DNA of 59,041 nt, filler included, from Sluysia triapertura (taxonomy: Eukaryota): NCBI GenBank assembly GCA_046118255.1. It is 4 parts of 4 records of this genome, joined end to end, with 100 filler letters (N's around TTAATTAATTAA, not from the genome) between each part and the next. Parts side by side here need not be neighbours in the genome. Positions count along the whole stretch, not along the records: positions 30,465 to 47,041 come from JBJNIA010201042.1; 3 more parts are not named here. The stretch is one strand, 5' to 3'. Position 1 is the first letter of the stretch, and each line of letters begins with the position of its first letter. This document shows positions 34,500 to 35,740 of the stretch, in pieces. The position numbers and the translations under genes are program-made. The notes under the pieces were generated by a model. That model worked only from the letters and a program-made list of their open reading frames with translations. It searched no databases and was not told the DNA's origin.

Positions 34500-35740
34500 A
34501 TGATAGACGATTAATAAATATAATCAAAAACTCTCGAAGCTTGATAATGTTACCCAATAAAGTTTAATAACGCAAAGATAACGACAATGAGGCAAAAGAA
34601 TATAAACATGATGAGTATCAATCCAATTATTACAAAGATAATGATTACCAGTTTAACAATTATAAAGATGATAATGATGCGCATAAAGTTAAAGAAAATA
34701 AGGATGACGATAATGAGTTTAAGGACTGTAAAGACGACGATTATAAAGTTAAAATCATAAACATAATTGCGATGATGTAAATTATTATAAAGATAATGAT
34801 TATCAACCCGACTATTATAAAGATGATCAACATAAATTTAAAGATTATAAAGATGATGAGTATAAAGTCAAAGATTAATGGTAACGACAATTATCTAAAA
34901 GACTGTAAAGATAACGATTATCAATTTAACCATTATGAAGACGATGACATGAAGTTAAAGATTATAAAGATGATGGAAATCAGGTTAAACAATATAAAGA
35001 TGGTAACCATAAATTTAAAGATTACAAAGATGATGGAAGTGAGATCAAACACCATAAAGATAATGATTACCAATCTAACTATTATAAAGATTATGACCAT
35101 AAAGTTGAAGAGTGCAGGAATAATGACGATGATGTAAAAGAGTATAAAGAAGATGAGCACAAAGTTGAACATTATAATGATACTAGCAATGAGATCAAAC
35201 ACTATAAAGATGATGATTACCAATCTAACTATTATAAAAATCAAGAGTGTAAAGATGCTAACGATGAGTTTAAAGATTATAAAGATGATGAGTATAAAGT
35301 CAAAGAATACAATGGTAACGACAATGATGTAAAAGACTATAAAGATAACGATTATCAATTTAACTATTTTAAAGATGATGACCATAAAGTTGAAGATTAT
35401 AAAGACGCTAACAATGAGTTGGAAGACTATAAAGATGACGATTATAAAATTAAACGTAATAATAATGATGTTTTCGAAGCTAATTTCGATAATTATGGAA
35501 TATGCGTGAAGAATGGAATTTATTGTCGTTAGGGACACACGGCCTGCGAATTGAGAATTTCAGAACTAGTCAAGAACTTTAGTTCATCGATAACGATACC
35601 TTTTAACAATAGACCCGTCAATAACTATTCAGAAGTAATTTATTCTTTTAATTATTGTAATAATATTATAAATTATGTTTGTTCTTTAGGTAGTGGAACC
35701 TATAACAACAATTGAGACACATACAGAAGATGATGTTTAA
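34500..35740 (+). pseudogene. Disrupted D/K/Y/N-rich decapeptide-repeat protein gene (FLAG-like units)
   Basis: 30-bp period over ~34571-35454 encoding xYKDDDYx(V/F)K-like units; 193 open codons at 34951-35529; three frameshifts upstream; TAG at 35530; phase-0 55-nt GT-AG intron at 35635-35689; final exon VVEPITTIETHTEDDV-TAA ending at 35740. Confidence 0.75.

What the first reader, a model, noticed from the sequence alone, without database searches (positions are those of the whole stretch)
34500..35740. Natural FLAG-like decapeptide-repeat gene missed by the ORF track
Seen: about 30 tandem 30-bp units that translate on + as a strictly 10-aa periodic D/K/Y/N/H-rich protein (e.g. KDYKDDEYKV, HYKDDDYQSN, EDYKDDDYKI). 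DYKDDDYK at 35425-35448 differs from FLAG (DYKDDDDK) by one residue. A non-repeat tail follows, with an in-frame 55-nt intron and terminal exon. The spliced tail and retained reading frame argue for a real gene rather than a satellite. This copy has three frameshifts and a TAG, so it is a pseudogene or mis-assembled. Inference: a Tyr/Lys/Asp-rich structural or cross-linkable protein, compositionally reminiscent of quinone-tanned flatworm eggshell proteins, although no signal peptide is visible. Intact paralogs might cross-react with anti-FLAG M2 (DYKxxD core).
Basis: partly seen in the sequence, partly recalled or inferred. Interest (0 to 1): 0.7.

Follow-up and report, generated by a model that had tools for sequence, protein, structure and literature searches.

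The report
Broken FLAG-like decapeptide-repeat gene copy
This is a real array of about 30 thirty-base units that bears the marks of once encoding an acidic Asp/Lys/Tyr-rich repeat protein with FLAG-tag-like motifs, but this copy is a broken member of a multi-copy family with no known relatives and no evidence of expression.

Summary
About 30 degenerate 30-bp units (34547-35454) read on the + strand as DYKDD-type decapeptides, and DYKDDDYK lies at 35425-35448. There are three frame-breaking deletions (after 34753, 34877 and 34948) and an in-frame TAG (35530-35532). I add two in-frame TAA codons at 34565-34570.

The array looks coding in origin. Second codon positions are almost invariant. The sense frame has the lowest pN/pS of all six frames (0.39, lowest in 300/300 bootstraps). 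The 3' end looks like a gene: GC 0.38 after the TAG, a 55-nt GT..AG interval at GC 0.13 whose signal pattern is unique in the piece, a 16-codon last exon, TAA, then AATAAA.

It is not a lone gene. Contigs of a same-species DNA run pile up at roughly 12-70 times single-copy depth over the array and its flanks, with length variants. Some copies are broken elsewhere.

Word searches of 5.8 billion protein clusters, HMMER against 1.84 billion representatives, Pfam, the ESM Atlas, two metagenome DNA scans and a literature search found no true relative. The predicted structure is disordered.

The eggshell reading has no support: no TES domain, no signal peptide, net charge -23. Most likely this is a decayed copy of a lineage-restricted, recently amplified repeat-protein family.

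The parts
34547..35454 (+). Array of about 30 degenerate 30-bp units. The consensus is about GAT TAT AAA GAT GAT GAC CAT AAA GTT AAA, which reads D-Y-K-D-D-D-H-K-V-K. An ATG at 34547 is the only in-frame start candidate.
   Evidence: TRF, the repeat finder, unit tables
34565..34570 (+). Two in-frame TAA codons at unit positions 10 and 1 of the first units. Each is one substitution away from AAA/GAA or TAT.
34753..34754 (+). Frame-breaking 1-nt deletion. Paralog contigs carry +G behind 34753 (clean restoration) or +T behind 34748 (frame restored but a TAA is created).
   Evidence: table 4
34877..34878 (+). Frame-breaking 2-nt deletion relative to the internal duplicate (GAA TAC AAT becomes GAT TA--AT).
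34948..34949 (+). Frame-breaking 1-nt deletion relative to the internal duplicate (GAC CAT becomes GAC -AT).
34780..34965 (+). Internal segmental duplicate of 35200-35400, about 90% identical. It carries two of the frameshifts and a 15-nt in-frame deletion.
34951..35529 (+). Longest open stretch of the sense frame, 193 codons: D 21%, K 16%, Y 12%, N 12%, net charge -23. Predicted disordered.
35425..35448 (+). DYKDDDYK, one residue away from FLAG (DYKDDDDK). With DYKDND at 35335 it is one of two DYKxxD motifs.
   Evidence: M2 motif from PMC11756784
35455..35634 (+). Non-repeat C-terminal coding-like region in the same frame, interrupted by TAG. GC is 0.29-0.38. There is a weak, sub-threshold CCCH-like match at its start.
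35530..35532 (+). In-frame TAG. The frame stays open for 60 more codons after it.
35635..35689 (+). Candidate 55-nt intron (GTAATT...TTCTTTAG) at GC 0.127. It is the only match to the pattern GTAANT..YYTTYAG on the + strand of the 16.6-kb piece.
35690..35740 (+). Candidate terminal exon (VVEPITTIETHTEDDV plus TAA at 35738-35740), GC 0.33.
35758..35763 (+). AATAAA, 17 nt after the TAA. A second AATAAA lies at 35821.
33501..34001 (.). High-copy A/C-rich repeat on the left flank. Summed contig depth is up to 8443, against about 18 for single-copy sequence.
   Evidence: table 2
36006..36840 (.). High-copy A/C-rich repeat on the right flank (depth 2700-16000). It is unrelated to the left one.
   Evidence: table 2

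Best explanation
The stretch is a decayed, non-functional copy of a lineage-restricted, recently amplified gene family. Tens of copies at 90% identity or more are present in the same genome.

The ancestral product was an intrinsically disordered, strongly acidic protein. It consisted of about 30 Asp/Lys/Tyr/Asn decapeptides, then a roughly 60-residue non-repeat region containing cysteines, and probably a short last exon behind a 55-nt intron.

Shown:
- the array and its periodicity;
- codon-position bias in the sense frame;
- six lesions in this copy (two TAA, three frameshifts, one TAG);
- the multi-copy state, including the non-coding flanks;
- array-length variants among copies.

Inferred:
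- The array grows and shrinks like a coding minisatellite by unequal exchange, as suggested by the internal 200-bp duplicate and the length variants.
- Purifying selection acted during most of the units' history but is no longer visible in the recent duplicate.
- The intron is a real intron.

This copy makes no protein. Whether any paralog does is open. If one does, the product would be a soluble polyanionic Tyr-rich repeat protein carrying DYKxxD motifs. No secretion signal is seen here.
For: - Array.
- Second codon positions have diversity 0.14, against 0.40 and 0.44 for positions 1 and 3 (p=0.008 and 0.001).
- pN/pS is 0.39 in the sense frame and 0.63-1.69 in the other five frames. The sense frame is lowest in 300/300 bootstraps.
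- At the four NAY-dominant third positions there are 18 C variants and only 1 purine.
- 3' architecture: GC is 0.38, then 0.13, then 0.33, then 0.18 across exon, intron, exon and downstream. The splice-signal match is unique, and AATAAA lies 17 nt after the TAA.
- The frame stays open for 60 codons after the TAG, where stops occur at 0.082 per codon.
- Multi-copy state: 2502 contigs of run X1 lie on 5 kb. Depth is 240-1450 over the array and 380-860 over the tail and 3' flank, against about 18 for single-copy contigs that match with 0 differences. There are many length-variant joints.
- The intron interval is as deep as the exons, so the copies are DNA-level duplicates and not retrocopies.
- Lesions.
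Against: - No transcript evidence: no RNA run holds the stretch.
- No relative in any protein resource.
- No convincing start or signal peptide.
- Two other frames are also open across the array.
- The column-permutation test for stop avoidance is not significant (p=0.14).
- The recent internal duplicate shows 1 synonymous and 9 non-synonymous changes, which looks neutral.
- At least one paralog variant is itself broken (+T creates a TAA).
- Conserved non-coding flanks and neighbouring high-copy repeats also fit a mobile or dispersed repeat.
- A NAN-type 3-nt sub-period could in principle descend from a trinucleotide microsatellite. A (TTA)31 tract lies 350 bp upstream.
Confidence: 0.58

Rival explanations
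1. The array is the internal minisatellite or accessory ORF of a dispersed, transposon-like repeat unit of roughly 1.8-3.4 kb. It was never an independent host gene, and its copy number reflects transposition.
For: - The whole block from about 33517 to 36910 is repeated, while the sequence on both sides returns to single-copy depth with 0 differences (tables 2 and 8).
- Non-coding flanks 34169-34502 and 35741-36005 are as multi-copy as the array.
- High-copy repeats abut both sides.
Against: - No terminal inverted or direct repeats join the flanks.
- No transposase, reverse-transcriptase or other Pfam domain in any open segment of the block.
- Copy number differs about 50-fold between sub-segments, so the block looks composite, not like one element.
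- A retained spliceosomal-type intron and AATAAA suit a host-type gene.
Confidence: 0.2
2. It is a non-coding purine-rich minisatellite whose open frames are a by-product of its AT-rich, stop-poor unit. The gene-like tail is coincidence.
For: - Three of six frames are open over the array.
- Stop avoidance is not significant by column permutation.
- Recent changes look neutral.
- No homologues and no RNA.
Against: - Marked codon-position bias, with the lowest pN/pS in exactly the frame that continues into the tail.
- Third-position changes at NAY codons are almost all synonymous transitions.
- The GC step pattern, the unique splice-signal match and the AATAAA.
Confidence: 0.1
3. One reading: a secreted Tyr/Lys-rich structural protein that is cross-linked by quinone tanning, like flatworm eggshell precursors.
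For: - Tyr is 12.4% and Lys 16%. Trematode vitelline proteins have about 12-15% Tyr and are cross-linked through DOPA-Lys/His (PMC11727788).
- The decapeptide periodicity recalls mussel foot protein 1 (from general knowledge).
Against: - No trematode eggshell synthesis (TES) domain or any other family.
- No hydrophobic N-terminus: the only in-frame ATG (34547) runs straight into repeats.
- Cysteines are present, whereas most trematode vitelline proteins lack them.
- Net charge is -23 with no Pro or Gly richness.
- The organism was not identified here.
Confidence: 0.07
4. The gene is intact in the animal, and the frameshifts and stops are assembly errors.
For: The first and third deletions touch short homopolymers (AAAA, CC).
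Against: - At the first frameshift about half of the short-read contig depth agrees with the window (table 4).
- The 2-nt deletion is not in a homopolymer.
- Three nonsense codons would also have to be errors.
Confidence: 0.05

Closest known systems
Pfam PF25296 'Decapeptide repeat region' (units such as xCKDAGFSAK or GYSVKELKDG)
   Same: Tandem 10-residue units with K-D at fixed positions. Members P0001 and P0002 are the best hits of the all-library HMMER search (E 2e-13 and 5.5e-9, 27% identity).
   Different: The window's array scores 14.3 bits against a cut-off of 45. It lacks the G-F/Y-S core. The hits are explained by shared periodicity, so it is not a member.
Trematode vitelline / eggshell precursor proteins (TES domain, IPR012615)
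   Same: Tyr content is near 12%, and Lys and His are available as cross-link partners.
   Different: No TES domain and no signal peptide. The array is repetitive, contains Cys and is strongly acidic.
Mussel foot protein 1-type decapeptide adhesives (AKPSYPPTYK repeats; from general knowledge)
   Same: Many tandem decapeptides, each with Tyr and Lys.
   Different: Those proteins are basic, Pro/Hyp-rich and secreted. This array has no Pro, is Asp-rich, has net charge -23, and shows no secretion signal.
FLAG epitope DYKDDDDK and the M2 core motif DYKxxD
   Same: DYKDDDYK (35425) and DYKDNDYQ (35335) satisfy DYKxxD (motif from PMC11756784).
   Different: FLAG is synthetic. Most units here read DYKDDE or DYKDDG and lack the sixth-position Asp. 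This copy cannot be translated, and binding is untested.
Coding minisatellites and repeat-protein pseudogene families
   Same: The unit length is a multiple of three. There are higher-order periods (90 and 135 bp), internal segmental duplication, and length variants between copies.
   Different: The family has no annotated intact member or homologue in any resource searched.

Membership tests
Pfam PF25296 Decapeptide repeat region | Score at or above the gathering cut-off (45 bits) | tested here: not met
   14.3 bits, E 0.037. True members score 337-485 bits.
Trematode eggshell / vitelline proteins | TES domain (IPR012615) | tested here: not met
   No such Pfam hit for any piece at E up to 1.
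Trematode eggshell / vitelline proteins | N-terminal signal peptide (product of secretory globules) | tested here: not met
   The only in-frame ATG (34547) is followed by MLPNKV and then repeats. No hydrophobic stretch is joined to the array. An upstream exon cannot be excluded.
Trematode eggshell / vitelline proteins | About 12-15% Tyr and no Cys (PMC11727788) | tested here: inconclusive
   Tyr 12.4% is met; 4 Cys in 193 residues is not met.
Mussel foot protein 1-type adhesives | Basic, Pro/Hyp-rich Tyr-Lys decapeptides | tested here: not met
   Net charge -23 and no Pro in 193 residues.
Anti-FLAG M2 epitope | DYKxxD core motif | tested here: met
   Two motifs in the conceptual translation, at 35335 and 35425. 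Antibody binding cannot be tested here.
Expressed protein-coding gene | Uninterrupted reading frame from start to stop | tested here: not met
   Two TAA, three frameshifts and one TAG.
Expressed protein-coding gene | Codon-position bias / pN/pS below 1 in one frame | tested here: met
Expressed protein-coding gene | Transcripts or spliced reads | not testable with these tools
   No RNA run holds the stretch. The two runs laid are DNA-like contigs.
Processed (retro) pseudogene | Loss of introns | tested here: not met
   The candidate intron is present here and is covered as deeply as the exons in the paralog contigs.
Transposable element | Terminal repeats or a transposition protein domain | tested here: not met
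   No LTR or TIR relation between the flanks. No Pfam domain.
CCCH zinc finger (PF25427 zf-CCCH_UNK) | Score at or above the cut-off (31.1 bits) and a C-C-C-H ligand set | tested here: not met
   19.3 bits over 14 residues. The spacing is C-x6-C-x6-C-x3-I, with the TAG inside it.

The most novel reading that the evidence does not exclude
Some of the tens of paralogs are intact and expressed. They would define an orphan family of highly acidic, disordered Asp-Tyr-Lys decapeptide-repeat proteins in this AT-rich, repeat-rich animal genome.

Each protein would carry many Asp-flanked tyrosines. These are candidates for Tyr sulfation or cross-linking if the protein is secreted. It would also carry genuine DYKxxD motifs, which would give endogenous background with anti-FLAG M2.
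Probability: 0.3. Interest if true: 0.5.

Novelty: new member of a known kind. Interest (0 to 1): 0.3.

Why it matters
If intact paralogs are expressed, there are two consequences:
- The family would be an unannotated orphan repeat-protein family.
- It would be a practical warning for anyone using FLAG-tagged constructs or the M2 antibody in this organism.

As it stands, the locus is mainly a clean example of a coding minisatellite caught in decay. It is also a reminder that open frames in AT-rich repeats need codon-level tests. This single copy has little wider significance.

Tried and rejected
- Word-index protein search with the 193-aa open piece, with a neighbouring 222-aa open segment, and with a 50-aa repeat/tail junction piece: no hits.
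- Full HMMER search of 1.84 billion representatives: 5 hits, all unrelated 10-residue-periodic proteins.
- ESM Atlas: best score 0.76, which is noise.
- Pfam on all pieces: only sub-threshold hits. The 16-residue terminal exon was too short to scan.
- Single-sequence AlphaFold2: pLDDT 42.6, so no fold search was attempted.
- Exact DNA scans of JGI metagenome contigs with a tail pattern and an array pattern: 0 hits.
- Literature search for the peptides: only mistyped or tandem FLAG tags.
- Looked for LTR or TIR relations between the flanks and for a second copy inside the piece: none.
- A shared promoter-like CCAAT motif upstream of the array and of the ORF at 37185 did not extend to real homology.
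- Rfam and ARAGORN over the piece: nothing at threshold.
- The spliced model was searched exon by exon by reference only. The joined product was not built or searched.
- The organism was not identified.

Full report
**1. What is there**

The piece (30465-47041) is AT-rich, about 26% GC. Between 34547 and 35454 lies an array of about 30 degenerate 30-bp units. Tandem Repeats Finder reports periods of 30, 90 and 135. The repeat finder reports 10-15-member families spaced in multiples of 30 or 15 nt, with three odd spacings of 89, 88 and 89.

On the + strand the units read as decapeptides of the form [D/E/H/Y]-[Y/C/H]-K-D-[D/N]-[D/G/E]-[Y/H/N]-[K/Q/E]-[V/F/I/S]-[K/E/N].

The period is not quite strict. 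There is one 12-residue unit (34658-34693) and one 5-residue half unit (35230-35244).

**2. Lesions in this copy**

Comparison with neighbouring units and with an internal duplicate (34780-34965 against 35200-35400, about 90% identical) places three frame-breaking deletions:
- -1 between 34753 and 34754;
- -2 between 34877 and 34878;
- -1 between 34948 and 34949.

The frame then runs open for 193 codons (34951-35529) to a TAG at 35530-35532. I add two in-frame TAA codons at 34565-34570. They occupy unit positions 10 and 1 of the first units, just after the only in-frame ATG at 34547. That makes six lesions in all.

**3. Coding or not**

Openness is no argument here. Frame 2 of the + strand and the in-register antisense frame are also open for 118 and 208 codons.
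- Column diversity is 0.40, 0.14 and 0.44 at codon positions 1, 2 and 3. Position 2 is lower with p=0.008 and p=0.001.
- Eight of ten codons are NAN codons.
- At the four NAY-dominant third positions the minority letters are 18 C and 1 purine. The changes there are almost all synonymous transitions, whereas first positions carry many transversions.
- Nei-Gojobori pN/pS over all unit pairs is 0.39 in the sense frame and 0.63-1.69 in the other five frames. The sense frame is lowest in 300 of 300 bootstraps.

Against coding:
- A column-permutation test for stop avoidance is not significant (0 stops observed, 1.5 expected, p=0.14).
- The recent internal duplicate differs by 1 synonymous and 9 non-synonymous substitutions, which is about the neutral expectation.

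I read this as a coding history followed by relaxed constraint.

**4. The 3' end**

After the TAG the same frame stays open for 60 more codons, where stops occur at 0.082 per codon. GC steps as follows:

| Interval | GC | Reading |
|---|---|---|
| 35530-35634 | 0.38 | coding-like |
| 35690-35740 | 0.33 | candidate last exon |
| after 35741 | 0.18 | downstream |

The candidate last exon ends in TAA at 35738-35740, and AATAAA follows at 35758.

There is one caution. In the paralog contigs of run X1 the three listed differences in this zone are 35709 C>T, 35713 T>C and 35733 A>G. In the unspliced frame these are a synonymous change and two stop-to-sense changes (TGA>CGA and TGA>TGG). That would let the unspliced frame run to a TAA at 35806, with AATAAA at 35821. 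However, the contigs at 35733 are far deeper than their neighbours and may come from unrelated AT-rich sequence. I favour the spliced model at about 60:40.

The joined spliced product was not built or searched. The exons were searched apart by reference, and the last exon, at 16 residues, was too short for the family scan.

**5. Copy number**

The look-up of sequencing runs found two holders, neither on record as RNA. Run X1 has 736 Mb of Logan contigs. Its single-copy contigs have depth about 15-24 and match the window with 0 differences at 33000-33516 and 36911-37183, so it is the same species and behaves as a DNA run.

It lays 2502 contigs at 90% identity or more on 33000-38000. Summed depths are:

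| Interval | Summed depth |
|---|---|
| 34169-34502 (upstream flank) | about 610 |
| array | 240-1450 |
| tail, intron and 3' flank | 380-860 |
| 33501-34001 | 1400-8400 |
| 36006-36840 | 2700-16000 |

The locus, with its non-coding flanks, therefore exists in tens of copies and sits between two unrelated high-copy A/C-rich repeats. These show no LTR or TIR relation to each other.

Many joints inside the array (skips of 132-731 nt) show length variants between copies.

At the first frameshift, about half of the depth has an extra base. A +G behind 34753 restores the frame cleanly. A +T behind 34748 restores the frame but makes a TAA. The other half agrees with the window. So the lesion is real and is shared by part of the family, and other copies are decaying too.

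The intron interval is as deep as the exons, so the copies are DNA duplicates and not retrocopies.

**6. Relatives**

- The word-index search of 5.8 billion clusters found nothing with the 193-aa piece, nor with a 50-aa junction piece chosen to catch short fragments.
- HMMER against 1.84 billion representatives gave five hits. All are unrelated proteins with 10-residue periodic repeats. Two are members of Pfam PF25296 'Decapeptide', a family that the window fails, at 14.3 bits against a cut-off of 45.
- The ESM Atlas gave noise.
- Two exact DNA scans of metagenome contigs gave nothing.
- No paper holds the peptides as a natural protein.
- A weak CCCH-like match (19 bits against a cut-off of 31) at the array/tail junction is below threshold and lacks the His ligand.
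- A neighbouring window ORF also found nothing, not even a listing of itself. This genome therefore seems absent from the protein collections, and these blanks say little about paralogs.

**7. The product, if made**

Composition is D 21%, K 16%, Y 12%, N 12% and E 9%, with net charge -23 over 193 residues. AlphaFold2 gives pLDDT 42.6, which means disorder.

No signal peptide or TES domain is seen, and cysteines are present, so membership of the flatworm eggshell family is not supported.

Only two motifs satisfy the M2 core DYKxxD.

**8. Verdict**

The most likely reading (0.58) is a decayed copy of a lineage-restricted, recently amplified coding-repeat gene family.

| Rival | Confidence |
|---|---|
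| Transposon-associated repeat unit | 0.2 |
| Non-coding minisatellite | 0.1 |
| Secreted cross-linkable eggshell-type protein | 0.07 |
| Assembly error | 0.05 |

Paralog sequences, expression and the identity of the organism remain open.

Noticed in passing
window 34111-34204: (TTA)31 microsatellite about 350 bp upstream of the array. Read in another phase it is (TAT)n, the same NAN-type triplet class as the array's codons.
   Followed up: partly
window 33501-34001 and 36006-36840: Two unrelated A/C-rich stretches with strongly negative GC skew. They are present in hundreds of copies in the same-species run (summed depth up to 8443 and 16182, against about 18 for single-copy sequence). The element type was not determined.
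   Followed up: partly
window 37143-38222 (+): Two open segments of 122 and 222 codons in the same frame, separated by stop(s) within 37509-37556. They are preceded by a CCAAT pair and a TATA-like motif near 37030-37070. The stretch is present in about 5-15 copies. It has no Pfam family and no homologue.
   Followed up: partly
window 39916-40600 (+): Three open segments with ankyrin-repeat character (Ank_2 E 1.6e-4 for 40183-40365). They are probably exons of an ankyrin-repeat gene.
   Followed up: partly
window 43146-43217 (+): tRNA-like sequence scoring 28.5 bits, just under Rfam's cut-off of 29, and not called by ARAGORN. The 59 nt just upstream (43089-43147) are 80% identical to 41608-41666. 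This suggests a tRNA-derived repeat or tRNA pseudogene with a second partial copy.
   Followed up: partly
window 45710-45894: Tandem repeat of a 67-68-nt unit, 2.7 copies, 79-83% matches.
   Followed up: no
window 34471-34703: A run labelled as a different organism (X2) holds a 233-nt contig identical to the window at depth 2.3, while its own long contigs have depth about 40. This looks like low-level carry-over of the window's organism, not conservation between species.
   Followed up: no
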